DNA of 64,000 bases from Diadema antillarum (taxonomy: Eukaryota). Position numbers and translations under genes: made by a program. Shown piece by piece: positions 14,463-51,976 of this stretch (its first letter is position 1; each line of letters begins with the position of its first letter). Location: contig NW_027271394.1 in NCBI RefSeq assembly GCF_040938485.1, positions 2,170,001-2,234,000 of the forward strand. The letters are read 5' to 3'. The notes below the pieces were generated by a model. The model saw nothing but the letters and a program-made list of their open reading frames with translations, was not told the DNA's origin and searched no databases.

Positions 14463-14494
14463 TCAGTTCAAGATTTTGTCCTCATAAAGTCGTT
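14463..14494 (-). CDS. Candidate terminal cytoplasmic exon (ERLYEDKILN*), middle gene copy
   Basis: Strong acceptor gttttccttgtctttcAG, present in both units, with the phase-1 frame open to a stop. The frame is ambiguous if an intervening micro-exon (~14826-14861) is used. Confidence 0.45.
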
Positions 14495-15278: not shown

Positions 15279-15413
15279 CTGTTACTTTGGGCGTGTCTTT
15301 CTTCCTCTGCATGACGGTGACGACGCACACCACAACAGCGAGAACGAAAAGGACGATGAGGAGGGCGTACGTTGTCGACATTGTTTGCAGGATTCCAGTT
15401 ACATGTACGAAGT
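15279..15413 (-). CDS. Transmembrane exon 2 (DFVHVTGILQTMSTTYALLIVLFVLAVVVCVVTVMQRKKDTPKVT), middle gene copy
   Basis: Hydrophobic stretch followed by the RKK stop-transfer motif. Acceptor ttctccAG, donor GTTTGT, 135 bp phase 1-1. The units differ by a frameshifting indel just past the donor, consistent with intron. Confidence 0.85.
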
Positions 15414-16276
15414 CTGGAGAAACAGACAGACAGACAGACAGACAGACGGAAAGGCACGTTATGGCGTTTTATGAATGATTTCGTAATTTCATCAGATTGC
15501 AGTTCTCGTTTGTAACCACTGGTAACCTACCAAGATGAAAATAAACTTGGTGTGTACGATCGCACAACACCGAAATTAAAACGTCCCGTCTTGAAACGTA
15601 TTACATTGTCACCGTCTCTCTAATAAGTGGTCGCTACCATATGATCTGACATTGCAGTAAATGTCAGCGTAAAACTACGTTTAAATTCCTAGTCCTATCT
15701 CAAATTGCACAAACATGGTAGTTCATTTCACCAAGAATCGTCATGTATTAGCACTATCTTAAACATTTATTTTAGAAGTTATGTAACAGATATTATGTCT
15801 ACACATGTTATGTTCGTTGTGCTTATCTATAACCGACTACCATACGTAACTGGACATTAAAATTCTACTCAAATAGAATACGAAACGTTGTCTTTTTCAC
15901 TCTTTTGTTATGTGATTTGATATGATGCATTTTTCAGTTCTCTCAGCCTCTGTCTTCATCCGATCTAACAAAACAAATCCCATGCAAACTTTAGGTGTAC
16001 TCGAACATTGGCACTACTATATTTTGCGTCGTACACAAATATATTAAATATGCTGCTGACATATATAAGGATTTTTAGCTTCTGAGAAAGAAACGTATGC
16101 AGGCCTATTCTCTGTTTTTATGATATAGAGCTTACCCTGTGTAAGTTGTAAAACGAAAGTGGGAAATGGTCGAAAGTAATAGACAAACTCAATATCATTC
16201 TTCGTCTTATTCAAGAGTAAACAGATGTTATATCCACGAAATTTGTGGATGATATTGTTGTTTACCAAACGCCTAC

Positions 16277-16540
16277 CAGTTGGACAATAAATTTCCGATG
16301 CAGTGATGAAACCGAAGTCGTTGAGGGCGCTACAAGTGACAGAGACACATTTCACAGGTTTGGGGCTGAGATAGACCCACGGAGATCTGCCCCTCGAGAG
16401 CGTCAGGTTGTCTGCTGTAATCACGTACTGGTGGAAATCAGGGTGGGGTTGGTAATCTTCGGTCACGTGACACAAAATTACGACAACCGTCACATTGTCA
16501 TCGGACGTATACTTGGACAACTTGATCTCAATCACATCAT
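16277..16540 (-). CDS. 4-Cys Ig-like domain exon 8, middle gene copy
   Basis: DDVIEIKL..VVILCHV..YQPHP..PKPVKCVSVTCSALNDFG..YCPTG. AG/GT boundaries, 264 bp. Confidence 0.85.
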
Positions 16541-16875
16541 CTGTTAAAGTATTCAGGAGACATTAGAGAAACAAGCGAGTATGAGTGCACTGAAGTCTGA
16601 GAGAGTTTATGCCTGTCTTCATGAAAGCAGTATACCTACTCACACTGGATGGTGATGTAAACAACAACAAAGATTGTAAAGTTGTGAATATGAAAAGAAT
16701 GAAATATGCAATCTTCATTGTGTTCGAAGTACTCACTGTGCAGTAATAGTAATGAAAGTGACAAATAGCAGTTATTTTCCAAGTTCTTTTACACCGGAGG
16801 ATGACCGCCATCCACCATAGTTCAATATGTATAGACGCGATGAGCGGCCGTACATCTTTGAAAGTATCGAAGTAC

Positions 16876-16956
16876 GGACACGGACACGGACATGAGGAAG
16901 AACAGCCGTCTGGCTGAATCATGTGCCGAGTTGAAATAAATAAATGAAATAAATGA
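16876..16956 (+). mobile_element. 81-bp retroposon 3' remnant with 6-bp TSD, unit A only
   Basis: aagtac on both sides with an aaataaataaatgaaataaatg tail; single aagtac in unit B (~49537). Confidence 0.6.
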
Positions 16957-17061
16957 AAGTACAGCATCGTCAAAAGAATGAAAGCGCAACTCTTTATACG
17001 ACTAATTGGATTAGGGGATTATAACTCATCGTCTGTGTTAAGAAAGTCAGATATCACGTAC

Positions 17062-17331
17062 CTCTGGGACAATGCAAACTAAGAGAGGTTGTTAACCCAT
17101 GGACATTGCTTCCTGTGCATCTGATGTTGAGACACCTGTTCTGATGTGACGTCACAATGGCAGACGTATTTGTTGAAGAGACGATCATGCTTTCACCGTT
17201 TACCTCGATACCAAAAATGTTGATAGGATGTTTTGGTTGGTTCGACGAATCGATAGAACAGGTGATGTTAATATTGGTGGTATCCGTGTCGTTTTGAAAT
17301 TGAATTGAGATCAGACCTTCTTCCGGTGGAT
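17062..17331 (-). CDS. 4-Cys Ig-like domain exon 7, middle gene copy
   Basis: DPPEEGLISI..INITCSIDSSNQPKHP..RCLNIRCTGSNVHG..HCPRG. AG/GT boundaries, 270 bp. Confidence 0.85.
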
Positions 17332-18454
17332 CTATCAAGATCAAGTGTAATGGGTGAATGGCAGTAGTAGAAATAAGGAAGATACGACTTTCTGCCACAA
17401 ATGTTCATAATAACTTCAGTGCAAGTATACACGATAAAAGATTTCATGAACATTGACACGAACCTCCAGTTGTGATGGAATACGTCAATCACTATAGAAC
17501 TCAACATCAGAAAGTTTAACACATTCTCTTCTTAAAGTAGAATTGGATAAGGCTCCTTTTACGAGTCTTTCACGCAGATGTTTTTGTTTTTCAGATGTTA
17601 TACTTGAATATTGTGATTGAATATGTAACTGGTGTTTATCTGTAAGCCTCGATATTGTATCTTCGTCTTGTTCTGTTTTCTTTCTCTTACTACTCTAGTA
17701 AACTGAGAGATTTAGTTATGACACCGCCAAGTTTTAACTTTCAAAAAGTCTTGTAAAGTTTCGCTTTGAAATGTGTAGACCTCCAGGGTCAAATCTAAGT
17801 TCACATTCTCCTCCGATGATTTATTGGGTAACTACTACTGTATCTCACATGATGCTGGACAAGTGATGCTTTTCAAAGTTTTTTTTTGTTTCCTTTCTCT
17901 CTTGTTCCCCTTTGCTATGTAGCCTTTTTCTGTGTGCCCTGATTGGAATCTAAAGCATTTGGTTTCTTAAGGGTTTGATACGCAAATCATTGAGCTATAA
18001 AGGACAAGCCCCCCAAAAAGTTTTGCTCTTAAATATTGTTCACTTTGTTATTTACATTTTCATAAATTATCTCTCTTTTCCCTTAAACTGTCACTTGTTT
18101 ACTCAGGGGGAATCGTGACGTCTCTACAGGTAACAAAGTTTCCGGAAGATGTAGTTGTAAACCGTACAGACTGAATTGAGATCTTTTATCATACTAGGTG
18201 TTACAAAAAACATTTCCCACTTTTGATCCTTTATAGTTTGAAAACTAAGGATAAAAAGTATGAAATGTTTTTTTTTTTTAACACCTAGTAGTTTTTCGTA
18301 ATGACAGCACGCGGTTATAGCGATAAGCCAAAGAGAATGAAAGTAACATGTCAGTATTATACATATATGCGTACATGTACATTACAATTAAGGAAAACAC
18401 ATCCACACATCTATGACACAAGCACGCGTATGATTTGATTTAAATCTACTTCAC

Positions 18455-18730
18455 CTGTAGGGCAATATGTTTCCGTAGTGTTTGTCGAACCGAGATCGTT
18501 GGTTCCAGTGCAAGTTACTACGGTACAGTTTTCAGGCCTTGTCGATATAGTGGTCGATGGCCTGGTTGACAATGATACAGTCTTCTTTCCAACCTTGACT
18601 TCGAAAGTATGCAGTGGAGGATGAAGCACAATCGTTTCATTTACGTGACAGTTTATGACCAATATTGGTTGCTTATTTTTGCCCAGTTTCTCTTCCAGCC
18701 GAATGTCGATTATTGCAGGGCCAGGTGGAT
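18455..18730 (-). CDS. 4-Cys Ig-like domain exon 6, middle gene copy
   Basis: DPPGPAIIDI..LVINCHVNE..RPENCTVVTCTGTNDLG..YCPTG. A (CT)n tract precedes the acceptor; 276 bp. Confidence 0.85.
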
Positions 18731-18756
18731 CTATTAACATGTGTTCCAAAGAGAGG

Positions 18757-18787
<31 letters not shown>

Positions 18788-19238
18788 CCAAAAACAAAAG
18801 AAAAAAAGGGAGCGCATCTAGATATGATCTGTCAACACGTAACATTGAAAATGTCGCAGTCATTAAAGACAAGAGATATACACATTAAAGTGATTTGGAA
18901 GAAAAGAATGAATAAAGGCAACTATGGTATCTTACCTTTACGGCAAGAATTTCTCGGAGTAGAAATAAAATGATGTTTGTCGGTTTTCATGAAGCAATTT
19001 CCGCCTTTTTTGTTGTTGTTGTTGATGTTATGTGCTTGAATGTATAATCTATCTCTTGAGCACTTAATTGCATCTAAACTTCAACTGTGAATGGTTAATC
19101 AGGGGGAACCAAAAAAAAAGCCTATACGTTTCAAGGTTGACATATTAAACATGAATGTTCCTTCTGATTCTAGTCTTAAGAAGCCAAACGAAAAATGCTG
19201 ACGTTGGTGCAAGCATCCTACAATTTGCATCCCCTCAC

Positions 19239-19508
19239 CTCTTGGGCAGTAGGTCTCGATAGAAGAAGTCGACCCATAGTCATTCTGACCAATACAAGTG
19301 ACGTTCATGCACCATTCGGGGCGGGGTGATAGGATGAGAGAGCTTGTGTTAGACTCCGTCCCAGTCTCCGTTTGGATGATGAAAGTGTGCAGACGAGGAA
19401 ACGGCTGGTCTCGCGAGTCCACGTGACAAGTGATGGAGAGGTTGACTGTAGTGCTGGGTAGTCGTTTCTCCAGCAATTCCACAGATATTATATCGGCGAC
19501 AGGCGGAT
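19239..19508 (-). CDS. 4-Cys Ig-like domain exon 5, middle gene copy
   Basis: DPPVADIISV..LSITCHVDSRDQPFP..RPEWCMNVTCIGQNDYG..YCPRG. Donor GTGAGG, 270 bp. Confidence 0.9.
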
Positions 19509-19645
19509 CTATGAAAAAGTCAAGTTAAAGAATTACTCAGTTAAAGTGATTATTTCGAGTATGTTTGCTTCAAACTTAGTTTAGCTTTATCTATCTAAAA
19601 GAGTATAAGGCTAACTTGTTATAGGTGACTTACACCTGATATTAC

Positions 19646-19898
19646 CTTTTGGACAGTATATTGTGGATGCTGTTGTTTCCAACACAAGACACTTGGATAC
19701 ACCATGTAGGACGAGGTGATATGGTAGTGCGAGGAGATGAAGACAAAATGACGTCATCAGCCGAGATGACGTAAGACTCGATAGCCGGAAAGGGTTTGTC
19801 CCTGGAAATCACGTGACATTCGATGTCGAGGGATATTTGGTTCTGAATGTCTACTTGCTCATGAAACCTGATGGACAGTGTGCCGTTTAATGGAGGAC
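19646..19898 (-). pseudogene. 4-Cys Ig-like domain exon 4, frameshifted in the middle gene copy
   Basis: 253 bp versus 276 bp in the paralog (53093-53368). It has a 6-bp in-frame deletion plus a 17-bp deletion (ttcgccaatcccgttgc) that removes the NGIG motif and shifts the frame. Confidence 0.85.
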
Positions 19899-21218
19899 CT
19901 AAGTGTGAAATTGAAATAAAGATTCATATCATTCACATTAACTGCTTCTTCTCCTCTCAGAAATTTCACGAAAACTGACGAAGATGAAAACACGTGATCA
20001 CTGATTATCATGATTGTCTCCTTCAGCTGTGCATACACCGCGTCTGTCAAGACGCATAAACTGATTTCAAGATTGACGATTTTTAAATATCATTTAAGAT
20101 ATGTAATGGTAAGAAAGGATTGGTGTGAAAAATTTGGTACCTCAAATTACATTCACCATTAAGCTTCAATATCTGGATCTCAGGAAGCAAGCATGTTCAT
20201 GAATTTTGAGTTATGACCGCAGCTTTCGTACATTGCCTATTGAATTTCTTCGTAATTCCTGCTTCTTGTTCTTAGCAAGATGTGCTTATGGAAAATAAAC
20301 GATACATGGATATGCTGTTGCCGCTTTGCTTTTGTGATCAAACTGTTTATATCTTACAAGAGTAAGGCAGTTTGTGGTACTTGGATACAGTAATGGAATG
20401 TGTAGATATTGATGAGGAGGTCACTGCGTTGATGATACTGTTATCATTATTATTAGGTATGCTTTTATCAATACTGAAATATGCCCATCTCGTCACTTTT
20501 TATTCAGGTGTCTTTTTTTCTTCATATCATGTTGGAGTACTCAATTATTAGCTCACGAAGGATTGGTCAAATTGATCAATGACATATATTCCATGTGGAT
20601 AACTCACACAGACGAATGTATATCATACAGAACTCATGGACCAACAAACCACACACACACACACACACACGCATACAGATACAAGACGTAGATTCATGAA
20701 AAAAGACACTCATACAGATGTACAGCTACACACATAGATACGTCATACATAATAACATACACTTGTATACCTACATGTGTTGATTCGCACAAAAGTCATG
20801 CTTACATAGTATTATTATCATTATTATTATTATTTCCATGTATCATAGGTGTAACGATATCTTTCAATGTAGTGAAAATCTAATATTTGTTTTGTTTCTC
20901 ATTTCTTGACGATAATACATTTATCTCTGTGACCAACTTGGATGGTACTTCAGGATGAATTTGATTGTATATTATTTGTTTTGTTTCTCAATTCTTGACG
21001 ATAATACATTTATCTCTGTGACCAACTTGGATGGTAGGGCCTACTTCAGAATGAATTTATCTCCTCAATTATCTCCTTTCATATGACATCCTATTTTGGC
21101 CTAAACCAATGAGGTGCATCTGCTGTACAATGACTAAGCATTCAATTGATCTTGATGTTATTATAAAGCTGCCTAAATGGCAATTGATAATTACGTTTAA
21201 GAAATCTTGTTCTACACG

Positions 21219-21221
<3 letters not shown>

Positions 21222-21263
<42 letters not shown>

Positions 21264-21310
21264 TGTATCATATATATGTATATATGTATGTGTGTGTGTT
21301 CGCGTCCACG
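21222..21310 (+). repeat. (TA)n/(TG)n microsatellite
   Basis: Read directly; the homologous site in unit B is an N gap. Confidence 0.9.
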
Positions 21311-23633
21311 CGCGTGCGTGTGTGTGAGTTTGTGTACTAATGTCATCATTCATGAGTTACGATTCACTTTTAATAACTTTCAACATGAATTTCTCGCTAT
21401 ACGTTGGTGTTACAACTATCTTAGTTTGTTCGTCACAATTTTCAACACTCATGTTGATTTTTATTTTTATTTTTTTTTTTTTTACAGAGAGGGTTGATAT
21501 ATATACCACGAACACCGAATCAGAACTACACATACATTCGGTTTCTCTGTTAAACCAGCAGTTTATTTATTGACGTGACCATCACTCACTAAGATCACTG
21601 CGGGCCATGCAAAAAAAAATCAAAAGAATATTACATCTTATTTATGGAAAAGAGAGAGAGGATGAACACATAAGACACTATAAAAAGAACAGAAACGCGA
21701 CTGATTGCTTTACATACATTGTAAGATACTTCAAGGAAACCGAAAGTACCACCAATGATGTCATTAGAAAATAATTGCTCTACTTCGTTTCCATAATGAA
21801 AAGACATTATACAAGGCTCAACATTTGATGTAGCCCTGTGGCCCGGGGCTCCCAGAAATAGATGTTGGGCAACCACTTAATAACAAAGTATATGTTTGTG
21901 AGCCCTTTTAACATACCTGCCAATTTTCGCATAATTGTCAAGGTTCTTAGTCATTTTAATTTTCTTATGTGTTACTTTCTTACTTCTTAGTCACAGTACG
22001 TGGTATTTGACACACATTGTCGAACATGTAAATATTCAAACAGTTATCATGATTTATTGTATTATCTTAATGTTTTATAAAAATAGTTCTTATTTTTCGG
22101 GCCATAAAAAGAAAATGCAATTCAATTATTCTGATGGCCCCAATGGGCCCCAAAAGAAAAAGTTGATATCGAGCCTTCTATTTTATATCATACACATCTA
22201 AGTAATGTGACGTAGAATTAAATCATATGAAGTAAAGTAGCTTCTTAATCAGTTCTATTTCTGTTTTCGACCGCCAATACATGAAACTAAAATTAACATA
22301 GTGACGGCATAATTAAATGAATTATACCCATCAATATTCATTATATTGTGTTTCAATTAGTCAAAACGTATTAAGTAAAAATACAATGCGATGTCAAGTT
22401 GAAGGTACACTATATAGCAGAGAAAATACTTTGAACAAGGTTTTGAGAAATTAATAATTTTGACAAGCAGAGGACCATCTTCATAAGCAAAGCTTGACTG
22501 GGAAAATGGCCTCAGATAATGTTGCAACATAAAATAAACTATCACAAAAGTACGCTATAGACATTGCCACTCACTATATAAAGTGTAATCAGCAGTTACT
22601 ATAAATGTAAGTAGGCGAGAAATCATACATCTTATATCAGACTTATCAGGAATTTTGTACATCAAATCAATACACGGTAAAATTTATCGACAATACTACA
22701 ATGAACATAAGATTAACGACAGTTGCATCACAATTATTCCACTGGCTACTTGTGGTTTGAAGACGTGCTCTTCATTTCGTTTCAGGTCACTTCCAATGAC
22801 ATAAAGATTATTGATAGGCAATAGAATCTATTTTGGAAACTACAGATAAGACATAATAACATGTGAATGATTTCAGACATTGTCAGAGTGAGTTAAGATA
22901 CAAAGTGTACAAATTATGATTCTTCATTCGGAGAAAATATTGTTGGTGTGCATCCAAGGCTTTCCCTCATTTTGACCCTCGCAGCTTTCCATACCTGCAG
23001 GCAAATGTCATAAAGGGATCTTAAAATTGTTGCCAAAGACATATAAACATGCGGGATATGGTGTCAACTGAAGATAAACAAATATTGTAGGCAGTACTGT
23101 GTGTTCTCAACAAAACCAAGTTTGTCTACAGAAAGGTAGTTCGTAGCAGTCAATTAAAGAATATTACTTGAGGCACTTCTGCGGTAGGAAAGTGAAACGC
23201 AATAAAGGCAGTGAATATACATCTAAAATGCGACAAGAAAATAAATCGTGAAAAGGGGGACATGGTATATCTATCTTTTAATGCAATAAAATCTTAAGTC
23301 ATTGATGAAATGTAAGAGTAGCAACATAGATGAAGCTAAGCGTGTTCTAAAATGTCTATGGAGGAACACAGCATGTCAAACCAACGAGTGTATTTTTTTT
23401 TTCCCCGATGAAAGACAATATCCTCATTTCTTTCGATTACCGATTACCGCTCGTCTGCATCTCTCATAATTGTATCTGGGCAATGATTCAAGTTAAGTTT
23501 ATCCAGGAGTATCAGGTTTTCTTGCCAAGTACTAAACCTAGAAAGTAGTAAGTAATTGTGCATTCTACTTGATAAATTTTTCAAAGCGCACGGATTCAGT
23601 AAATAAAACACGCTATGAATATACTCACCTCAA

Positions 23634-23767
23634 TCAAAAGACATTTTTTCTCTTCACGAGGACAGTGAAGCAGGTGATGATGGAGAGGATGAAAACGACG
23701 ACGAGAAGAGCGTACGTGGTCGACGATTGTTGAAGGACCCGTCGATGAGGGCTAGCTATGGGACCCC
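23634..23767 (-). CDS. Transmembrane exon 1 with stop (GGPIASPHRRVLQQSSTTYALLVVVFILSIITCFTVLVKRKNVF*), middle gene copy
   Basis: Phase-1 acceptor tttatcgatAG, hydrophobic helix, KRK, then TGA. A GTGAGT donor follows 5 nt after the stop. The STTYALL motif is shared with TM exon 2. Confidence 0.8.
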
Positions 23768-23882
23768 CTATCGATAAAGCACCAATGGACAACGGTAGTG
23801 TTTTCTTCTTCCTGTGTTAGTGTCACTGTATTCCCTCCGTACTACGCGGTTTTTAGCTTGGACTTGATAGCCAACAACTTAA

Positions 23883-24860
23883 TCCTATTCAGCCCAAGCT
23901 ATTTTGACCCCTCGCAGGCCCAAGGGGGGCACATTGTGCCCCCCTATATAACTTTTTTATTATTTGATGTATCATCATCATATTTGGCACGTGGGTAGAG
24001 TAACTCATACTCTACATGACCGTACGTTTTAATTTTCACAAGGTCACCCATGGAGGGCGCTATTTACAAAAATATAAAGAAATACATAGGAAATATGCTA
24101 AAAGCATGATTTTTCGGTATAATTTCTTTATCCCCATTATATATGTCTTATTATAGACCAATCATTTTCATATTTGTCACAAATGATAAGCAAGTAGAAT
24201 CTTATTATTTATGTTTGAAATTTCTCAAGGTCACCACATGGGGGCGCTATTCATATCAACATAGTGATACATTATGAGACCTGAGATGAAATGTTTGGGA
24301 TGTGTACATGTATAGTTATGACATTTCATATTTGCATAATACTGGAATTTTGAGATTGCAAATTGATAATATGATAAACTGATGATATTAGAGGCATAAC
24401 TTGGGTGAAGGAATCAAAATAACTCAAAATATAAAGGCAATTTGTAGAAAATATTATTGTTTTCAATTATCTCTATTATATCTATTGTTTAATGCCTTTG
24501 TCACATAAAAACAAAGGAAATAAAAAGAAAAAATCTTCCACGACCATAATTACTTCAAATTTTGCTTCTTCAACAAATTTCAGCCAAGAAACATCCATTT
24601 CATACACTGTAATGCTGTTAAATATAATGGGAACAGAAAAAAAGATGCAAAATCTGACTGACATGGTTGTCAGTTTATGGTTGCCATGGCAACCAGCAAC
24701 ATCAAATATAGCTAAATCATATACCAAAATGTTCGCAATAAGATTTTAGGAAAAGTCACCGAATTTGGTTGAAATCGAATTAAGGACGGAGGAGTGGCAA
24801 ACGAAAATCTCGTAGGAGGGGCACAATGTGCCCCCCCCCCCCCCCTTGGGCTTTATAGGG
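23883..24860. mobile_element. piggyBac-like non-autonomous element, unit A only
   Basis: ttaa|tcctattcagcccaag ... cttgggctttataggg|ttaa, with subterminal inverted gggggcacattgtgccc. Empty TTAA at ~63736. Confidence 0.7.
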
Positions 24861-24864
24861 TTAA

Positions 24865-25246
24865 AGGGATGGTACAGTATTGATGGAGATGAGAATTGGG
24901 CTTTTAACTTTTTGCGAGATACCAAGAAAACACTTATGATATAGTACAGAGCATACCATTTTATGAGGAATTCAAAGTTTATTTGATGAAAATCGGGTTT
25001 GGAATGACTGAAACATCCAAAAACAAAGTAAAACAAAGCGATAGTAATAAAGTGTGGGTCCCACACTTTATTAGAATCTCTCTTTTTTGGATATCTCAGC
25101 CATTTCAAAACCAATTTTCATCAAATAAACATTGAATGCCTGAGAGAATTACATGCTCTTCCATATTTCATAAGAGGTTTCTCATTATCTCACCAAAAAA
25201 TGTTAGAAACCTGAAATTAGGTCTCAACCAAAACTGTACAATCCCT
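24865..25246. mobile_element. Kolobok-like MITE, unit A only, inverted relative to 10827-11220
   Basis: ttaa|agggatggtacag ... ctgtacaatccct|ttaa; the internal sequence is the reverse complement of the 10827 family. Confidence 0.7.
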
Positions 25247-25837
25247 TTAAACGCTGTCTAAGTGTAATTGCTATCGCAAAGAGCGCAATGATGCATTCCT
25301 TGCTGAAACGTATCTGTTTTAAATTGTCGATTTAAGTATTTTTCTACCTCATCTAAAGCATTGTATATTTTGTCAAAAGGTCGCAGAATAATTATGGAAG
25401 GAAATACGACATAAAAAAATAACAATCAAACTGTCGTGCTGTTCAAATTAAGTGTGCTGTTCCAACCTAACGGTATAAAACTTGAACACGTACTAGACTT
25501 GAATTGCTGAAAGTATAGTAAAATCAGACGAATATACAGATACAGAAGGTGATCTGTGACGATCATGGATCATGTGACAAGTATTTCATTTGTTTGTAAC
25601 CTTCAATGAAACTATCTAGCGCCCTCTCTTGTCTCAGTGCCCACAGATTATTACCTTCTTCTCTACCCCGTGAAGTGACTAGGAGATTTCTGATTACCAT
25701 CATGCACACAAATTTGAAAAAAAAAAAGCGCGATACAATTAATGATTATTGTCAGGTACTTATAGGAGCACTTTTAGGTCCATATACCCACTGTGTGCTT
25801 TGCTTTGAGAAGGATGACTCATGATACTTTAACTTAC

Positions 25838-26137
25838 CAGAAGGAGTTTCTGTCCGGCAATGTTCCATCCATGACAACGTGTCTCCGATTCCGTTGGTCG
25901 CAGAACACGTGACATTGATGCAGGCATCGGGGAGTGGAGACAGGATCGCTGAGGCACAGCTGGAGGAGGACAAGGTGTCGTTATCAGCTGTAATGGTGTA
26001 TGTGTGGAGATGTGGGTAAGGCTGGTCAGAGAGGTCAACATGACAGGTGATGATTAGAGTTACCAGGTTTCCTTCACCTCTGATTTCCGTCGTCTGGATC
26101 CTAAGGATGTTGCTACCAGGTTGTTCGGGACCGGTTT
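25838..26137 (-). CDS. 4-Cys Ig-like domain exon 3, middle gene copy
   Basis: ETGPEQPGSNIL..LIITCHVDLSDQPYPHLHTY..PLPDACINVTCSATNGIG..HCRTETPSG. Donor GTAAGT, 300 bp. Confidence 0.9.
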
Positions 26138-27059: not shown

Positions 27060-27335
27060 CTGGCTGTGGGGGACAGTAGGTCTTGGTCATTTCAGTCTCC
27101 CCATATTCATTTATACCAGTGCACACGACATCGATGCATGTGTTGGGTTGAGGGTCTATGGTCACCGTAGGAGAAGCTGAATCGGAAATGACGTTATCAT
27201 CGACTGCAATGAGGTACGTGTTGATTGGTGGAAACGGTTGGTCTTCTGGATCCACGTGACAAGTAATGATGAGACTTGATTCAGCAGCTTCTTGAGTCTC
27301 AAACCCCACATTGATGATTCTTTCTGGTGGCTTAT
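27060..27335 (-). CDS. 4-Cys Ig-like domain exon 2, middle gene copy
   Basis: DKPPERII..LIITCHVDPEDQPFPPINTY..PQPNTCIDVVCTGINEYG..YCPPQPG. Donor GTAAAT, 276 bp. Confidence 0.9.
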
Positions 27336-27958: not shown

Positions 27959-28288
27959 CTCGAGGACAGTGTGTGAGCGTGGCTGAGGTCGTTCCAATCC
28001 CGTTCGTCGCGGAGCACGTGAGTTCGATGCAGGCGTTAGGGCGTGGTGAGAGGATTGCTGAGCCGGAGCTTGATGACGATAGAGTCGTAGAGTCAGTACT
28101 GATGGTGTAGGTGTGGAGGTACGGGGACGGCTGATCAGTGAAGTTCACTCGACAGGAGATGACCAGATTAACCAGGTTATCCTCGCCTTTGATCTCTGCA
28201 ACATCGATTGATAAGATGTTCTCTCCTGGAGGGGTACTGGGACTTGGAGTGATACATGGCGTGATGGACCGGGGTACATCGACACCAC
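27959..28288 (-). CDS. 4-Cys Ig-like domain exon 1 (with Pro/Thr-rich linker), middle gene copy
   Basis: GGVDVPRSITPCITPSPSTPPGENIL..LVISCRVNFTDQPSPYLHTY..PRPNACIELTCSATNGIG..HCPRG. Donor GTAAGT, 330 bp. Confidence 0.9.
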
Positions 28289-30610: not shown

Positions 30611-30802
30611 CTGTAACCGCCAGAGTAGCAGAACGCACAACACCGTACACATGGCACTGAAGTGTATCGCCGTGGCTTGCCGTCTTTGGGGTGAATGTCA
30701 ATCTACTCGTCATGTCGTAATAAGTGAAGCGATCAACGCCGTAAGTTAGGCCTTCGTTCAAGTCTGCGTTGGCAAATATTGCGGCCGCAGCACTCAGATT
30801 CC
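30611..30802 (-). CDS. Partial Ig (C2-like) exon, C-terminal half, middle gene copy
   Basis: NLSAAAAIF..YYDMTSRLTFTPKTASHGDTLQCHVYGVVRSATLAVT carries the E/F/G-strand pattern (SxLTFTP..GxxLxC). AG/GT boundaries, 192 bp, phase 1-1. Confidence 0.8.
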
Positions 30803-31774: not shown

Positions 31775-32553
31775 CTTCGTCCTACTAGATGTGCACGCAA
31801 TTTAGGGGTTCTTTTTGATGATCAACTGATGCTGATTGATCATATTAACAGTATATGTCGTACAGCGTCATTTTGGACTACAAAGAATTGGTTCAATTAG
31901 ACGTTATCTTGATCAATGTGCGACTGAACGGTTTATACATGCTTTTGTAATGAGTAGAATTGATAATTGTAATGGATTGTTATATGGTTTGTCAGATTCA
32001 ATGTTAGGTACACTGCAGCGAATTCAAAATTCAGCTGCAAGATTGGTTACCCGAACTCACATATATGACTCTATTTCTTCAATATTACACATGTTGCACT
32101 GGTTGCCAGTCAAAGATAGGTTAGTTTATAAGTTACTTGTAATTGCATATAAATGTCAACATCAGTTAGCTCCTTATTATTTGCAACAGCTCCTCCAAGA
32201 ATATCAACCTTCCAGACAACTTCACTCAAGCACCAAACAATTGTTAAAACCGGTTAATGTATCGACTAAGTCATATGGTCAACGATCATTTCAATATTCA
32301 ATACCTCAACTTGGAATCAACTCCCCAATTATATCAGAGAATGTTCATCATTAGATCAGTTCAAGTCTTTATTGAAGTCTCATTTGTTTGTAAAGTAACC
32401 ATTGTTCTGTAAATTGTTTAATGATGTGTTTTAAGTTGATATATATGTAATTTTCTACTTTGTATTGTGTGTTCTTACACATGTATAATCTGTCTTTTCT
32501 CATTTCAAAAAGCGCTTAGAGACTTGAATGTAATTTGCGCTCTATAAAAATGG

Positions 32554-32627
<74 letters not shown>
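31775..32627 (+). mobile_element. 5'-truncated L2-clade LINE (C-terminal part of ORF2, 3' UTR and (TTA)n tail), unit B only
   Basis: PTRCARNLGVLFDDQL..HINSICRTASF/IGSIRRYL..SRIDNCNGLLYG..LQRIQNSAARLV..LHWLPV are motifs typical of L2/CR1-group ORF2. One frameshift near 31875; absent from unit A (~1340). Confidence 0.9.
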
Positions 32628-32628
<1 letters not shown>

Positions 32629-32645
32629 CGGATGTATGAACTCAC

Positions 32646-32978
32646 GTTCTCCGGCACATGTTACGCCCACATCATCGTCGTGCCCACAACTGGAGCGATA
32701 GTTCTATGCGTAGCATCCCCACGGCCCTCTGTAGCACTCTAATAGCGAATTCAGGTCCCTTGTTGGACAGTAGATTCCATCGTCTAACCAAATAGGACCT
32801 GAGCCTTGCCCAAAGTGGGCATTGTGATGGACCGAAGCTACCGATGAGTACCCAAGCTGTCTACACACCGCGTTCCCCTCCTCAGTACCCCAACCCAAAT
32901 CACACGCCGTACCCCAAACCCCGTCACACTGTATCTCCACTCGGCCTTCATGGTCGCCGCTCCCTCCTACAAGTCTCA
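32646..32978 (-). pseudogene. SRCR domain exon with in-frame premature stop, middle gene copy
   Basis: 333 bp and colinear with 1357-1689. TAG at 32704-32706 (..GCYA*NYRSSCGHDDDVGVTC), with the frame resuming intact after the stop. Confidence 0.9.
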
Positions 32979-38892: not shown

Positions 38893-39194
38893 TCATGAGA
38901 ATACCAAAAAACTATGGTTAAGAATATATGAAATTAAGATATGCTCCAAACAGCAATATGAATAAGCACTTTCAAATATCGTGAACTTATGTCCATATTT
39001 TCTTTCAGACTTTCTATAATAGTGGATCAGACTATCCACTGTACTCGTCGTTTGTATGCCATCGGTAATCTGTACGCCATTTAAGTACCAAAACACGCGT
39101 TCTGAGCCAAACACTTTATCGGCTGTACAGACGGCTGTAACTTCCTGGTTTGGTGTCAGAGGGCTTGGTACTTCGAGAGTCACGCTGGTTCCAC
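38893..39194 (-). other. Partial Ig exon, N-terminal half only, with no good donor; middle gene copy
   Basis: Acceptor ttatttAG, then GGTSVTLEVPSPLTPNQEVTAVCTADKVFGSERVFWYLNG, running to a stop at 38893. Confidence 0.7.
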
Positions 39195-39634
39195 CTAAAT
39201 AAGATAATAACAGAAGAAAGGAAAAGAGAATAATGCGGCTTGATGGACTTTAATACGACAAAAATCACCTTACTTGAAATTCACTCGTCCAGCTTTTTTT
39301 TTTCAGGGACCAGATGTAATTGTCCTTTTAATAAAAAAAAAGAAAAAAACAATTAAAAACTCCAACAATTTACCACTTTTCAAACTATTGCACAAGCACT
39401 GTCATTTGAATGATTTCTTTGTGTGTGTGTGTGTTTTCCCCCTTGGATCCGATATCTCATTTGTTTTCTCTGTTTATACAAACGTACTTTAAAAAAGAAC
39501 AAAAAGAATCCCTGAGAAGTGGAGTATTTACACAAAACTACAGCAACCAATTGAATTAGCAATTGAGCCATAAGTCCAAGACTAAGTTTGCTGTGAAATA
39601 AATATATTAAACCTTTTTGATATTCATATCTTAC

Positions 39635-39698
39635 CAATAAAGGGGATGGCGATGGATAATAGTCCAAGTAGAAATAATCTTCGTCTCTCAGCCATCAT
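39635..39698 (-). CDS. Signal-peptide exon (MMAERRRLFLLGLLSIAIPFI-G), middle gene copy
   Basis: ATG, hydrophobic core and phase-1 GTAAGA donor; only conservative changes from unit A. Confidence 0.85.
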
Positions 39699-42589: not shown

Positions 42590-42800
42590 NNNNNNNNNNN
42601 NNNNNNNNNNNNNNNNNNNNNNNNNNNNNNNNNNNNNNNNNNNNNNNNNNNNNNNNNNNNNNNNNNNNNNNNNNNNNNNNNNNNNNNNNNNNNNNNNNNN
42701 NNNNNNNNNNNNNNNNNNNNNNNNNNNNNNNNNNNNNNNNNNNNNNNNNNNNNNNNNNNNNNNNNNNNNNNNNNNNNNNNNNNNNNNNNNNNNNNNNNNN
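42590..42800. other. Assembly gap (N run)
   Basis: Ns at the position homologous to the (CA)n tract at 10598-10654. Confidence 1.
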
Positions 42801-48944: not shown

Positions 48945-49208
48945 CAGTTGGACAATAAATTTCCGATGCAGTGATGAAACCAAAGTCGTTGAGAGCGCTA
49001 CAAGTGACAGAGACACATTTCTCAGGTTTAGGGCTGAGATAGACCCACGGAGATCTGCCTCTTGAGAGTGTCAGGTTATCTGCTGTAATCACGTACTGGT
49101 GGAAATCGGGGTGGGGCTGGTAATCTTCGGTCACGTGACACAGAATTACGACAACCGTCACATTGTCATCGGACGTATACTCGGACAACTTGATCTCAAT
49201 CACATCAT
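48945..49208 (-). CDS. 4-Cys Ig-like domain exon 8, right gene copy
   Basis: Paralog of 16277-16540; open frame, 264 bp, same splice sites. Confidence 0.85.
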
Positions 49209-49801
49209 CTGTTAAGGTATTCAGGAGACATTAGAGAAATAAACGAGTACGAGTGCAATGAAGTCTTATAGAGTTTATGCCTGTCTTCATGAAAGCAGTA
49301 GCTACTCATGCTGGATGGTGATGTAAACAACAACAAAGATTATAATGTTTATTGAATATGAAAAGAATGAAATATGCAATCTTCATTGTGTTCGAAGTAA
49401 TTACTGTGCAGTAAAAGTAATGAAAGTGGAATATAGCAGTTATTTTCCCGGTTCTTTTACACCGGAGGATGACCGTCATCCACCATAGTTTGTATGTGTA
49501 GACGCGATGAGCTGCCGTAAATCTTTGAAAGTATTGAAGTACAGCATCGTCAAAAGAATGAAAGTGCAGCTTTTTATACGACTAATTCGACTAGGAAATT
49601 ACAACATTAAACTGTATGTCTCTGCTTTATAATATTCATCTATAAATTCTTGCGTAACAATGATAATGACTGACAGGGTTTAATGTTAATCGGGCATGAG
49701 CTTTTTTAGTAACAGGTAAGCTTTCCACGGCCACCTTTTGAATATATCCTAAGAATAGCTCACACTCATCGTCTGTGTTTAGAAAGTCAGATATCACGTA
49801 C

Positions 49802-50071
49802 CTCTGGGACAATGCAAACTAAGAGAGGTCGTTGACCCATGGACATTACTTCCGGTGCATCTAATGTTAAGACACCGGTTCTGATGTGACGTCACAATGG
49901 CAGACGTATTTCTTGAAGAGTAGATCATGCTTTCACCGTTTACCTCGATACCAAAAATGTTGATAGGATATTTCGGTTGGTCCGACGAATCGATAGAACA
50001 GGTGATGTTAATATTGGTGGTATCCGTGTCGTTTTGAACTTGGATTGAGATCAGACCTTCTTCCGGTGGAT
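49802..50071 (-). CDS. 4-Cys Ig-like domain exon 7, right gene copy
   Basis: Paralog of 17062-17331; open frame, 270 bp. Confidence 0.85.
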
Positions 50072-51196
50072 CTATCAAGATCAATTGTAATGGGTGAATG
50101 ACAGTAGTAGAAATAAGGAAGATACGACTTTCTGCCACAAATGTTCATAATAACTTGAGTGCAAGTATACACGATAAAAGATTTCATGAACATTGACACG
50201 AACCTCCAGTTGTGATGGAATACGTCAATCACTATAGAACTCAACATCAGAAAGTTTAACACTTTCTCTTCCCAAAGTAGAATTGGATAAGGCTCCTTTT
50301 ATGAGTCTTTCACGCAGATGTTTTTGTTTTTCAGATGTTATACTTGAATATTGTGATTGAATATGTAACTGGTGTTTATCTGTAAGCCTCGGTATTGTAT
50401 CTTCGTCTTGTTCTGTCTTCTTTCTCTTACTTCTCTAGTAAACTGAGAGATTTAGTTATGACACCGCCAAGTTTTAACTTTCAAAAAGTCTTGTAAAGTT
50501 TCGCTTTGAAATGTATAGACCTCTAGGGTCAAATCTAAGTTCACATTCTCCTCCGATGATTTATTGGGTAACTACTACTGTATCTCACATGACGCTGGAC
50601 AAGTGATGCTTTTCAAAGTTTTGTTTTTTTTTTGTTTCCTTTCTCTCTTATTCCCCTTTGCTATGTAGCCTCTTTCTGTGTGCCCTGATTGCAATCTAAA
50701 GCATTTGGTTTCTTAAGGGTTTGATACGCAAATTATTGAGCTATAAAGGACAAGCCCCCCAAAAGTTTTGCTCTTAAATATTGTTCACTTTGTTATTTAC
50801 ATTTTCGTGAATTATCTCTCTTTTCCCTTAAACTGTCACTTGTTTACTCAGGGGGAATCGTGACGTCTCTACAGGTAACAAAGTTTCCGGAAGATGTAGT
50901 TGTAAACCGTACAGACTGAATTGAGATCTTTTATCATACTAGGTGTTACAAAAAACATTTCCCACTTTTGATCCTTTATAGTTTGAAAACTAAGGATAAA
51001 AAGTGTGAAATGTTCTTTTAACTCCTAGTAGTTGTTCGTAATGACAGCACGCGTTTATAGCGATAAGCCAAAGAGAATGAAAGTAACATGTCAGTATTAT
51101 ACATATATGCGTACATGTACATTACAATTAAGGAAAACACACTCGCCCACATCTATGATACAAGCACGCGTATGATTTGATTTAAATCTACTTCAC

Positions 51197-51472
51197 CTGT
51201 AGGGCAATATGTTTCCGTAGTGTTTGTCGAACCGAGATCGTTGTTTCCAGTGCAAGTTACTACGGTACAGTTTTCAGGCCTTGTCGATAAAGTGGTTGAT
51301 GGCCTGGTTGACAATGATACAGTCTTCTTTCCAACCTTGACTTCGAAAGTATGCAGTGGAGGATGAAGCACAATCGTTTCATTTACGTGACAGTTTATGA
51401 CCAATATTGGTTGGTTATTTTTGCCCAGTTTCTCTTCCAGCTGAATGTCGATTATTGCAGGGCGAGGTGGAT
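51197..51472 (-). CDS. 4-Cys Ig-like domain exon 6, right gene copy
   Basis: Paralog of 18455-18730; open frame, 276 bp. Confidence 0.85.
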
Positions 51473-51496
51473 CTGTTAACATGTGTTCGAAAGAGA

Positions 51497-51543
<47 letters not shown>

Positions 51544-51976
51544 GGAGAGGGAGAGCCAAACACACACAAAAACAGGAAGCGCCTCTAGATGTGATCTGTC
51601 ATCACGTAACATTGAAAATATTGCAGTCATTAAAGACGAGAAATATACACATTAAAGTGGTTTAGCAGAAAAGAATCAAGGAAAGGTAACTATGATATCT
51701 TAACTACCTATGACAAGAATTTCTCGGAGTAGGAATAAAATGTTTGTCGGTTTTCACGAAGCAATTTCCGTCTTTGTTGTTGGTGTTGTTGTTGTTGATG
51801 TTATGTGCTTGAATGTGCAATCTAGCTCCTGAGCACTTGACTGCATTTAAACTTGAACGGTGAATGGTTTATCAGGGGGTACACAAACTCTACGTTTTAA
51901 GGTTGATACATTAAACCTGAATGTTTCGTCTGATTTTGGTCTTCAGAAAGCAAACGAAACATGCGGAATGTTAGTG

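What the first reader, a model, noticed from the sequence alone, without database searches (positions are those of the whole stretch)
15279..25838. Two paralogous TM exons in one unit: short versus long receptor isoforms, or a hidden second gene
Seen: TM exon 1 (23629-23767) ends in KRKNVF* and has a donor 5 nt after the stop. Five more Ig-like exons and a second TM exon (shared STTYALL motif, RKK tail) follow downstream. I found no convincing signal-peptide exon between 23629 and 19898. Ig-like exon 3 (donor at 25838) can join exon 4 (acceptor at 19898) in frame by skipping TM1. Inference: one gene produces a 3-domain, nearly tail-less receptor and an 8-domain receptor with a cytoplasmic tail, a possible decoy/signalling pair with different ectodomain reach.
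Basis: partly seen in the sequence, partly recalled or inferred. Interest (0 to 1): 0.75.

Follow-up and report, generated by a model that had tools for sequence, protein, structure and literature searches.

The report
Two-bodied sea-urchin receptor repeat unit
The stretch is one slightly damaged copy of a repeat unit in the sea urchin Diadema, where a complete surface-receptor gene is followed by a second receptor body that has no start or signal-peptide exon of its own yet still evolves like working coding sequence, so both probably share one leader, though no RNA data could test this.

Summary
The coordinates hold. On the minus strand lie D1-D3, TM1 (23767-23629, TGA, donor 5 nt later), D4-D8 and TM2 (15413-15279), nearly all phase 1-1.

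- D4 is 253 nt, with a 17-nt deletion, so D4 to D5 is out of frame.
- The upstream SRCR exon has an in-frame TAG.

The unit is really 39698-14463. It reads leader, half-Ig, SRCR, half-Ig, D1-D3, TM1 (A body), then D4-D8, TM2 and a short tail exon (B body). It recurs about 8.5 times in 264 kb, at least 36 times genome-wide, and in Diadema setosum.

The donor behind TM1 probably leads to a conserved terminal exon, an ordinary 3'-UTR intron.

The B body is under purifying selection (100 synonymous, 110 non-synonymous, 0 stop variants; p=3e-12). No leader was found between TM1 and D4.

Best reading (0.5): one leader serves two alternative receptor bodies.

No RNA data exist here. RefSeq models in this array never join D3 to D4. 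Both tails are short and lack known motifs.

The scan had already found this Diadema-only family on other DNA.

The parts
39633..39698 (-). Leader (signal-peptide) exon of the unit, MMAERRRLFLLGLLSIAIPFIG, phase-1 donor
   Evidence: It is homologous to the leader of D. setosum XP_072173864.1 (P0039). It is the only leader-like exon found in the unit.
39045..39194 (-). N-terminal half-Ig exon (first Cys of the pair). The 3' end is uncertain: phase-1 donors lie at 39129|39128 and 39045|39044.
   Evidence: The far donor used in D. setosum A-only genes is lost or out of phase in this array.
32646..32978 (-). SRCR exon (333 nt, phase 1-1) with a private in-frame TAG at 32706-32704
   Evidence: Pfam SRCR E=6.6e-18. 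Sequence read. Seven sister units are open at that codon.
30611..30802 (-). C-terminal half-Ig exon (second Cys), 192 nt, phase 1-1
27959..28288 (-). D1 domain exon, 330 nt
27060..27335 (-). D2 domain exon, 276 nt
25838..26137 (-). D3 domain exon, 300 nt.
   Evidence: 89% identical to D3 of RefSeq A-type proteins.
23629..23767 (-). TM1 exon with stop TGA at 23636-23634, then TTGAG|gtgagt
   Evidence: Protein is 100% identical in at least 24 copies genome-wide. RefSeq A-type proteins end at the same place.
22900..22994 (-). Conserved block with acceptor CCTGCAG|G. Probably the terminal 3'-UTR exon of the A body. The 3' end is not defined.
   Evidence: 98-99% identical among 7 units against about 90% for the flanks. 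99% identical to D. setosum L039, and also present behind an A-only gene in L015. AATAAA at 22058 and 21571.
19646..19898 (-). D4 domain exon, damaged: 253 nt with a 17-nt frameshifting deletion
   Evidence: 52 of the 53 D4 copies that scored E<=1e-30 in the genome are full length; this one is the exception.
19239..19508 (-). D5 domain exon, 270 nt
18455..18730 (-). D6 domain exon, 276 nt
17062..17331 (-). D7 domain exon, 270 nt
16277..16540 (-). D8 domain exon, 264 nt
15279..15413 (-). TM2 exon, 135 nt, phase-1 donor, no stop
14463..14494 (-). Tail exon of the B body: (G)AA..AAC TGA, reading ERLYEDKILN then stop
   Evidence: Acceptor and stop are kept in 7 units. The exon plus its 30-nt flanks on each side (93 nt) are 100% identical in D. 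setosum L039.
20775..20799 (-). Homologue of the 25-nt 'MTFVRINT' mini-exon that D. setosum RefSeq models use as start codon before D5. It has no signal peptide, and the donor is lost in 2 of 7 units.
48945..53368 (-). Sister unit's intact D4'-D8' (D4' is 276 nt), used as reference for the D4 lesion. TM2' lies at 48093-47959 and TM1' at 63606-63468.

Best explanation
Shown. The finding is one repeat unit (39698-14463, minus strand) of a tandem array specific to Diadema. G000 matches the D. antillarum assembly in size and contig number. Each unit holds two receptor bodies.
- The A body is complete: leader, half-Ig, SRCR, half-Ig, D1-D3, then TM1 with its stop inside the TM exon.
- The B body lies 3.7-10 kb behind it and has no leader: D4-D8, TM2 and a 10-codon tail exon.
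- All exons from the leader to TM2 keep phase 1, except TM1, which carries the stop, and the damaged D4.

Inferred. The TM1 donor leads across a short 3'-UTR intron to a conserved last exon.

Inferred. The B body evolves as coding sequence, and the only leader exon found in the unit is the A leader. B is therefore most likely expressed from the same promoter and leader as A, by skipping the A 3' end. This would give two alternative membrane receptors from one unit.
- The other joins the half-Ig exons to D4, which recreates the stand-alone B-type protein known from other Diadema loci (about 0.3).

This particular unit is decaying. It has a TAG in the SRCR exon and a 17-nt frameshift in D4. Only forms that skip those exons could still be read through.
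For: Architecture:
- Exon map and phases.
- The same order of 15 exon types recurs in about 8.5 units over 264 kb.
- TM1 is followed by D4 at 3.8-10 kb in all of about 36 copies on C506, C95 and C1184, and in diverged arrays on C132 and C25.
- The same composite unit occurs in D. setosum L039.

B body is coding:
- 44 of 44 D5-D8 exons have AG/GT, length 0 mod 3 and no stop.
- dN/dS is 0.24-0.53, like D1-D3 at 0.17-0.57.
- 210 distinct variants split 100 syn, 110 nonsyn, 0 stop, against 55, 149 and 6.3 expected if neutral (p=2.8e-12).
- Against D. setosum, pN/pS is 0.36 for B and 0.30 for A, and all 11 B exons are intact.

No own leader:
-.
- Stand-alone B-type genes do have a leader plus half-Ig exon before D4 (P0034; L014).

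TM1 donor explained:
- A conserved exon with a good acceptor lies 635 nt downstream. It is also present behind A-only genes.
- A paralogue (P0002/L013) uses the homologous donor to reach a coding tail exon.

Lesions private to this unit.
Against: - There is no transcript evidence at all. No RNA run holds the stretch, and the runs laid were DNA contigs.
- No database protein of this subfamily joins D3 or the half-Ig exon to D4 among models of 333-1708 residues.
- D. setosum RefSeq models instead run from D5 through TM2 into the next unit's A exons. Their start codons look ab initio, and the products would carry an internal TM.
- A short, fast-evolving leader exon could have escaped my scan.
- AATAAA signals behind the A terminal exon would have to be bypassed.
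- Selection was measured among paralogous copies. The events are not fully independent.
Confidence: 0.5

Rival explanations
1. A hidden second gene. The B body has its own promoter and an unrecognised first exon in the TM1-D4 interval. A and B would then be two adjacent genes that are simply amplified together.
For: - Stand-alone A and B genes exist as separate genes elsewhere (L013, L015, L014).
- The A body has its own terminal exon and AATAAA signals before D4.
- The interval contains conserved blocks, for example 22497-22438 at 96%.
- That block holds a conserved ATG-ORF with a phase-1 GT, MKMVLCLSKLLISQNLVQ at 22484-22430.
- D. setosum RefSeq models start in this interval.
Against: - No homologue of any family leader or half-Ig exon lies in the interval.
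- The 22484 ORF has a Lys inside its hydrophobic core.
- Its few differences between units are all non-synonymous, including L>P.
- The RefSeq mini-exon encodes 8 residues with no signal peptide. It loses its donor in 2 of 7 units, skips D4, and differs between models (mini-exon, TE ORF, intron).
Confidence: 0.22
2. The unit is phased the other way, as RefSeq draws it in D. setosum. B exons would be 5' exons of transcripts that continue from TM2 into the next unit's half-Ig/SRCR...TM1. These would be conjoined or read-through RNAs running along the array.
For: - Six D. setosum models (XP_072177035, 37, 38, 39, 40, 43) join D5, part of D7, D8 and TM2 to the next A body.
- They use odd internal donors, which suggests some read support.
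- D. antillarum models P0181 and P0182 also chain neighbouring units.
Against: - The products would lack a signal peptide.
- They would place disulfide-rich SRCR and D domains between two TM segments.
- They skip the intact, constrained D4 and D6 exons and the conserved tail exon with its stop.
- Symmetric phase-1 exons make such chains easy for a gene predictor to build.
Confidence: 0.13
3. The B body is a dead, 5'-truncated gene fragment that hitch-hikes in the amplified unit.
For: - It has no leader.
- D4 is frameshifted in 2 of 11 cassettes in the 264 kb.
- No D. antillarum RefSeq protein of this B subfamily was found.
Against: - There is strong codon-level constraint and no stop codon among the 210 variants of D5-D8.
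- Splice sites are intact in 44 of 44 D5-D8 exons.
- 52 of the 53 D4 copies that scored E<=1e-30 genome-wide are full length.
- All B exons are intact in D. setosum.
- The lesion rate is the same as in the A body: 3 A-exon against 2 B-exon lesions.
Confidence: 0.08

Closest known systems
Diadema 'A-type' uncharacterized proteins (RefSeq, e.g. D. setosum XP_072173864.1 = P0039, XP_072173866.1 = P0008; D. antillarum XP_071503323.1 = P0037)
   Same: - Same exon order: leader, half-Ig, SRCR, half-Ig, D1-D3, TM.
- 80-90% identity in D1-D3.
- The protein ends 6 residues after the membrane, inside the TM exon (KRKVVY / KRKNVF).
   Different: - At the D. setosum loci L013 and L015, no D4-D8/TM2 block follows the TM exon.
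- The window's copy has a TAG in the SRCR exon.
- Its half-Ig exon has lost the far donor.
Diadema 'B-type' uncharacterized proteins (D. antillarum XP_071505158.1 = P0034; D. setosum XP_072172362.1 = P0007)
   Same: - Five D domains colinear with D4-D8.
- A TM with the STTYALL motif.
- A short tail encoded by a small last exon.
- D4 follows a phase-1 donor.
   Different: - They have their own leader and half-Ig exon directly before D4.
- They are only 40-58% identical to the window's D4-D8.
- They lie in separate arrays with a period of about 20 kb.
D. setosum composite-array models XP_072177035-043 (P0044-46, P0166-168)
   Same: - Orthologous array (L039) with the same composite unit.
- D5, D8, TM2, D1-D3 and TM1 are 89-100% identical to the window.
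   Different: - The models are phased B then A.
- They skip D4 and D6, and D7 wholly or in part, as well as the tail exon.
- They start at doubtful ATGs.
- None joins D3 to D4.
Genes with alternative terminal or TM exons, or split loci. All from my own knowledge and not tested here: Drosophila Dscam1 exon 17.1/17.2, membrane/secreted Ig heavy chain, CEACAM1 long/short tails, and Botryllus FuHC, later resolved into two genes.
   Same: One locus with two alternative membrane-anchoring 3' ends. As with FuHC, the question is whether there is one gene or two.
   Different: Here each alternative 3' part would bring its own multi-domain ectodomain, not just another TM or tail. The whole arrangement is also amplified at least 36 times. 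No transcript evidence exists yet.
Paired activating/inhibitory immune receptors (KIR, LILR, PIR; from my own knowledge)
   Same: Short-tailed and longer-tailed relatives lie side by side in a rapidly duplicating cluster.
   Different: There is no ITIM/ITAM-like motif in the roughly 20-residue tail and no charged residue in TM1 or TM2. The two ectodomains also differ.

Membership tests
Diadema A-type SRCR/D-domain receptors | Exon order leader, half-Ig, SRCR, half-Ig, D1-D3, TM, with the stop inside the TM exon | tested here: met
   against P0039, P0008 and P0037
Diadema A-type SRCR/D-domain receptors | Open reading frame through all exons | tested here: not met
   TAG at 32706-32704 in the SRCR exon of this unit only
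Diadema B-type D4-D8 receptors | Five colinear D domains, TM, then a small tail exon with the stop | tested here: met
   D4 is frameshifted in this unit.
Diadema B-type D4-D8 receptors | Own leader and half-Ig exon directly upstream of D4 | tested here: not met
   None lies between 23629 and 19898, nor in any of 8 sister intervals
Immunoglobulin superfamily domain | Match to a Pfam Ig-clan profile | tested here: not met
   No hit at E<=1 for D1-D8, apart from one stray 0.22 hit
Immunoglobulin superfamily domain | Seven-strand beta sandwich with a Cys pair in strands B and F | tested here: met
   AF2 pLDDT 95 with 7 strands. The invariant C31 and C77 fall in strands 25-33 and 73-80. Disulfide geometry was not measured.
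Immunoglobulin superfamily domain | Conserved Trp in strand C | tested here: not met
   No invariant or near-invariant Trp in 57 aligned domains
Fibronectin type III domain | Closest solved folds are FN3 | tested here: inconclusive
   Best Z is 10.6 (gp130 FnIII, rmsd 2.7, 95 aligned), against 8.7-8.9 for Ig C2 domains. Foldseek gave no hit at E<=0.001, and there is no Pfam fn3 hit.
One gene with alternative terminal (TM) exons | Transcripts that share 5' exons and end in either TM1 or TM2 | not testable with these tools
   No RNA run holds the stretch. Only frame compatibility and codon constraint could be shown.
Paired inhibitory/activating receptors | ITIM/ITSM in the long tail, and a charged TM residue in the short-tailed partner | tested here: not met
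   The tail QRKKDTPKVTERLYEDKILN has no [SIVL]xYxx[IVL]. TM1 and TM2 have no charged residue (read by eye).

The most novel reading that the evidence does not exclude
Each unit of this Diadema array would be a single transcription unit. One promoter and signal-peptide exon would feed two mutually exclusive receptor bodies, each with its own ectodomain, membrane anchor and 3' end. One body is an SRCR-in-Ig head on a 3-domain stalk. The other is a 5-domain stalk, or 15 domains where the cassette is triplicated. Exon phase 1 throughout would allow further in-frame shuffling. This two-bodied design has been amplified at least 36-fold and is kept in two species.
Probability: 0.45. Interest if true: 0.75.

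Novelty: new variant of a known kind. Interest (0 to 1): 0.55.

Why it matters
Sea urchins are known for very large, lineage-specific innate-immune gene families. This family is restricted to Diadema, with only 29 representatives among 1.84 billion proteins, and it has no Pfam domain and no described function.

If one leader really drives two different receptor bodies, the array would be a compact way to double a receptor repertoire. It would also couple the expression of two ectodomains. That makes it a clean test case for alternative 3'-cassette choice in an invertebrate immune-type locus.

The result also flags a practical problem. Symmetric phase-1 exons in tandem arrays lead automatic annotation to chain neighbouring genes, so the RefSeq models of this family need transcript-based revision. 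This matters for studies of D. antillarum die-offs that rely on those models.

Tried and rejected
- **Pfam.** Scans of every exon gave nothing beyond SRCR.
- **RNA evidence.** The one run search found only three DNA-type runs.
- **Reads laid on 19000-24999.** This gave short DNA contigs from many paralogous copies. No indel was listed at the D4 lesion, but no listed contig spans it, so the 17-nt deletion is neither confirmed nor refuted by reads.
- **Leader search in the TM1-D4 interval.** The only hydrophobic ATG-ORFs with a phase-1 donor were two: one made of a (TG)n repeat, and MKMVLCLSKLLISQNLVQ at 22484-22430. I rejected the second as a likely signal peptide.
- **The RefSeq 'MTFVRINT' mini-exon.** I rejected it as a real leader: 8 residues, donor lost in 2 of 7 units.
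- **Far donor of the half-Ig exon.** This donor, used in D. setosum A-only genes, is out of phase, absent or preceded by stops in this array.
- **G000 and the annotated assembly.** An identity test with P0034 gave best exon identities of 94-98%. That is uninformative, because only 76 of 2011 candidates were scored. The size match with the preprint is the better clue.
- **Spliced models.** Exons were searched one by one by reference, and full-length comparisons used database proteins only.
- **N runs.** The N runs at 42590-42800 and 54600-54737 were left untouched.


Full report
**What is in the sequence**

The window is AT-rich animal DNA.

| Exon | Coordinates | Note |
|---|---|---|
| D1 | 28288-27959 | |
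| D2 | 27335-27060 | |
| D3 | 26137-25838 | |
| TM1 | 23767-23629 | KRKNVF, TGA, TTGAG, then gtgagt |
| D4 | 19898-19646 | 253 nt |
| D5 | 19508-19239 | |
| D6 | 18730-18455 | |
| D7 | 17331-17062 | |
| D8 | 16540-16277 | |
| TM2 | 15413-15279 | |

Every domain exon has AG/GT borders, starts in phase 1 and is a multiple of 3 nt long. D4 is the exception at 253 nt.

I aligned D4 to the sister copy in the same window (53368-53093, 276 nt). D4 has lost 6 nt in frame and another 17 nt out of frame, removing the G-x-N-G-I-G part of the domain. D4 to D5 is not, and the shifted frame hits a stop inside D5. The 8-domain product therefore cannot be read from this unit.

**The unit is larger than the finding**

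Searches with the domain profile found homologues only in Diadema. These were RefSeq 'uncharacterized proteins' of D. setosum and D. antillarum. Only 29 representatives out of 1.84 billion matched, 22 of them strongly.

These proteins fall into two architectures.
- A-type (P0039, 606 aa): leader, N-terminal half of an Ig domain, SRCR, C-terminal half of the Ig domain, D1-D3, and a TM ending KRKVVY.
- B-type (P0034, 572 aa): leader, half-Ig, five D domains, TM and a short tail.

Mapping these parts on the window places four more exons in front of D1:
- a leader exon at 39698-39633;
- the half-Ig exon from 39194;
- an SRCR exon at 32978-32646 (Pfam SRCR E=6.6e-18);
- the second half-Ig exon at 30802-30611.

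The finding's D1-D3/TM1 is thus the 3' part of an A-type gene. D4-D8/TM2 is colinear with the body of a B-type gene, but it has no leader or half-Ig exon of its own.

A small exon at 14494-14463 follows TM2 in phase and reads ERLYEDKILN then stop. Its acceptor and stop are kept in seven units. The exon plus its 30-nt flanks on each side (93 nt) are 100% identical in D. setosum.

In this unit the SRCR exon carries an in-frame TAG at 32706-32704. Seven sister units lack it.

**Array context**

- Window 2553-25484 is a tandem duplicate of 34007-63973 at 85-97% identity.
- With 200 kb of adjoining contig, 264 kb hold about 8.5 units. All have the same order: leader, half-Ig, SRCR, half-Ig, D1-D3, TM1, D4, D5, a minisatellite, D6-D8, TM2.
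- One unit carries the D4-D8 cassette three times before a single TM2.
- Genome-wide, TM1 copies at 93% identity or more lie on C506, C95 and C1184, about 36 in all. Each is followed by a D4 at 3.8-10 kb.
- Diverged arrays on C132 and C25 show the same adjacency.
- TM1 is 100% identical in protein in at least 24 copies.
- G000 has 1,754,659,819 bases in 2963 contigs. The D. antillarum HiFiasm v0.4 assembly has 1,754,675,526 bp in 2,964 scaffolds, with 84% duplicated BUSCOs (10.64898/2026.05.24.727502). The two match apart from one mitochondrion-sized record. Part of the copy number therefore reflects two haplotypes.
- D. setosum has the same composite unit (L039). It also has loci where A-type (L013, L015) and B-type (L014) genes stand alone.

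**The donor behind the TM1 stop**

A block starting at 22994 is 98-99% identical among units, while its flanks are about 90%. It is preceded by the acceptor CCTGCAG|G. It is 99% identical in D. setosum L039, and a 71%-identical counterpart lies behind an A-only gene in L015.

In a paralogue (P0002, locus L013) the homologous donor joins a small coding tail exon. The simplest reading is an ordinary 3'-UTR intron. The stop lies 5 nt before the last junction, which by general knowledge is too close to trigger nonsense-mediated decay. The donor does not point to D4.

**Is the second body alive?**

Yes, by several measures.
- In the 264 kb, 44 of 44 D5-D8 exons and 9 of 11 D4 exons are open, with correct borders and lengths.
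- Pairwise dN/dS is 0.24-0.53 for D5-D8, against 0.17-0.57 for D1-D3.
- Counting each variant once, D5-D8 show 100 synonymous, 110 non-synonymous and 0 stop changes. Neutral expectation is 55, 149 and 6.3 (chi-square 53, p=2.8e-12). D1-D3 give p=7e-10.
- Against D. setosum, pN/pS is 0.36 for B exons and 0.30 for A exons, and all B exons are intact there.
- Of the 53 D4 copies that scored E<=1e-30 genome-wide, 52 are full length. The finding's copy is the exception.
- Lesions are equally rare in the two bodies. The A exons have three: the SRCR TAG here, a D2 frameshift and a D3 stop elsewhere. The B exons have two, both D4 frameshifts.

**Where could its leader come from?**

No homologue of a family leader or half-Ig exon lies between TM1 and D4 in any unit.

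A scan for ATG-ORFs with a hydrophobic core and a phase-1 donor gave two candidates.
- One is a microsatellite artefact.
- The other is MKMVLCLSKLLISQNLVQ at 22484-22430. It is conserved as DNA, but it has a Lys in its core, and its few differences between units are all non-synonymous, including L>P.

Because all exons are phase 1, two upstream donors fit D4. The other is a conserved phase-1 donor in the half-Ig exon (39045|39044). That route would recreate the stand-alone B-type order.

**What the annotations say**

No protein of 333-1708 residues in the collection joins D3 or half-Ig to D4 in this subfamily.

Six D. setosum models run D5, part of D7, D8 and TM2 into the next unit's half-Ig or SRCR and on to TM1.
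- Their start codons sit in a 25-nt mini-exon (window homologue 20799-20775, donor lost in 2 of 7 units), in a transposon ORF, or in intron sequence.
- Their products would lack a signal peptide and carry an internal TM.

D. antillarum models P0181 and P0182 chain neighbouring A genes, one by skipping TM1. I read these as chaining artefacts or read-through RNAs. They show that the predictor finds such in-frame joins easily. They do not define the gene.

**Domain fold**

Fifty-seven D domains share invariant Cys31 and Cys77, plus Cys72 and Cys93 in at least 90% of them, and no conserved Trp. AlphaFold gives a 7-strand sandwich at pLDDT 95. Foldseek finds nothing at E<=0.001. VIA-align ranks FN3 domains first (gp130, Z 10.6) and Ig C2 domains at Z 8.7-8.9. 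'Ig-like' is fair at the level of fold, not of family.

**Tails**

The A tail has 6 residues and the B tail about 20. I see no ITIM/ITAM-type motif and no charged TM residue. The decoy/signalling idea has no support beyond the length difference.

**Limits**

- No RNA run holds the stretch.
- The laid runs were DNA contigs from many copies and do not settle the D4 lesion.
Exons were searched singly by reference.

**Verdict**

The best-supported reading is a two-bodied unit with one leader (0.5). A hidden second promoter (0.22) and the RefSeq-style phasing (0.13) are the live rivals. This particular copy is damaged in both bodies. Earlier notes of this scan had already found the Diadema-only SRCR-in-Ig family on other DNA.

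Noticed in passing
window 32704-32706 (-): Private in-frame TAG in the SRCR exon of the finding's unit. Seven sister units have a sense codon there.
   Followed up: yes
window 52007-52658 (-); also L039:15114-16450: Minisatellite made of the last ~20 codons of D5 plus its donor. There are 6 copies behind D5' in the sister unit, none in the finding's unit, and about 16 in a D. setosum unit.
   Followed up: partly
C506:2,080,000-2,100,000 (window coordinates about -74,000 to -89,700): One unit has the D4-D8 cassette three times (5.45-kb period) before a single TM2. Similar D4 triplets recur on C95 and C1184. This would give a 15-domain stalk if all are spliced.
   Followed up: partly
window 23629-23767 and at least 24 copies genome-wide: The TM1 exon is identical in protein in every copy and nearly so in DNA, while neighbouring ectodomain exons differ by 5-16%. 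This points to strong constraint or homogenisation on the membrane anchor.
   Followed up: partly
window 39016-39194 (-) and sister units: The half-Ig exon has an 8-nt deletion relative to D. setosum A-only genes. The annotated far donor is therefore out of phase, absent or behind stops. Two internal phase-1 donors share the heptamer GTACAG, and one of them cuts out the Ig cysteine.
   Followed up: partly
window 54931-61301: A 6.4-kb insertion in the sister unit's TM1'-D4' interval, next to the N run at 54600-54737. Content was not examined.
   Followed up: no
window 31836-32354 (+): A 172-aa ORF in the SRCR to half-Ig intron that looks like a retroelement fragment. It has no Pfam hit.
   Followed up: partly
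L014:16600-16790 (D. setosum stand-alone B-type locus): An open C-terminal half-Ig exon (..LTFTPSSSHHGKTLQC..) with a gtaagt donor lies between the half-Ig exon and D4, but it is not in the RefSeq model P0007. B-type proteins may have a complete Ig domain.
   Followed up: partly
window 32545-32640 (-): A long (AAT)n microsatellite directly behind the SRCR exon donor.
   Followed up: no
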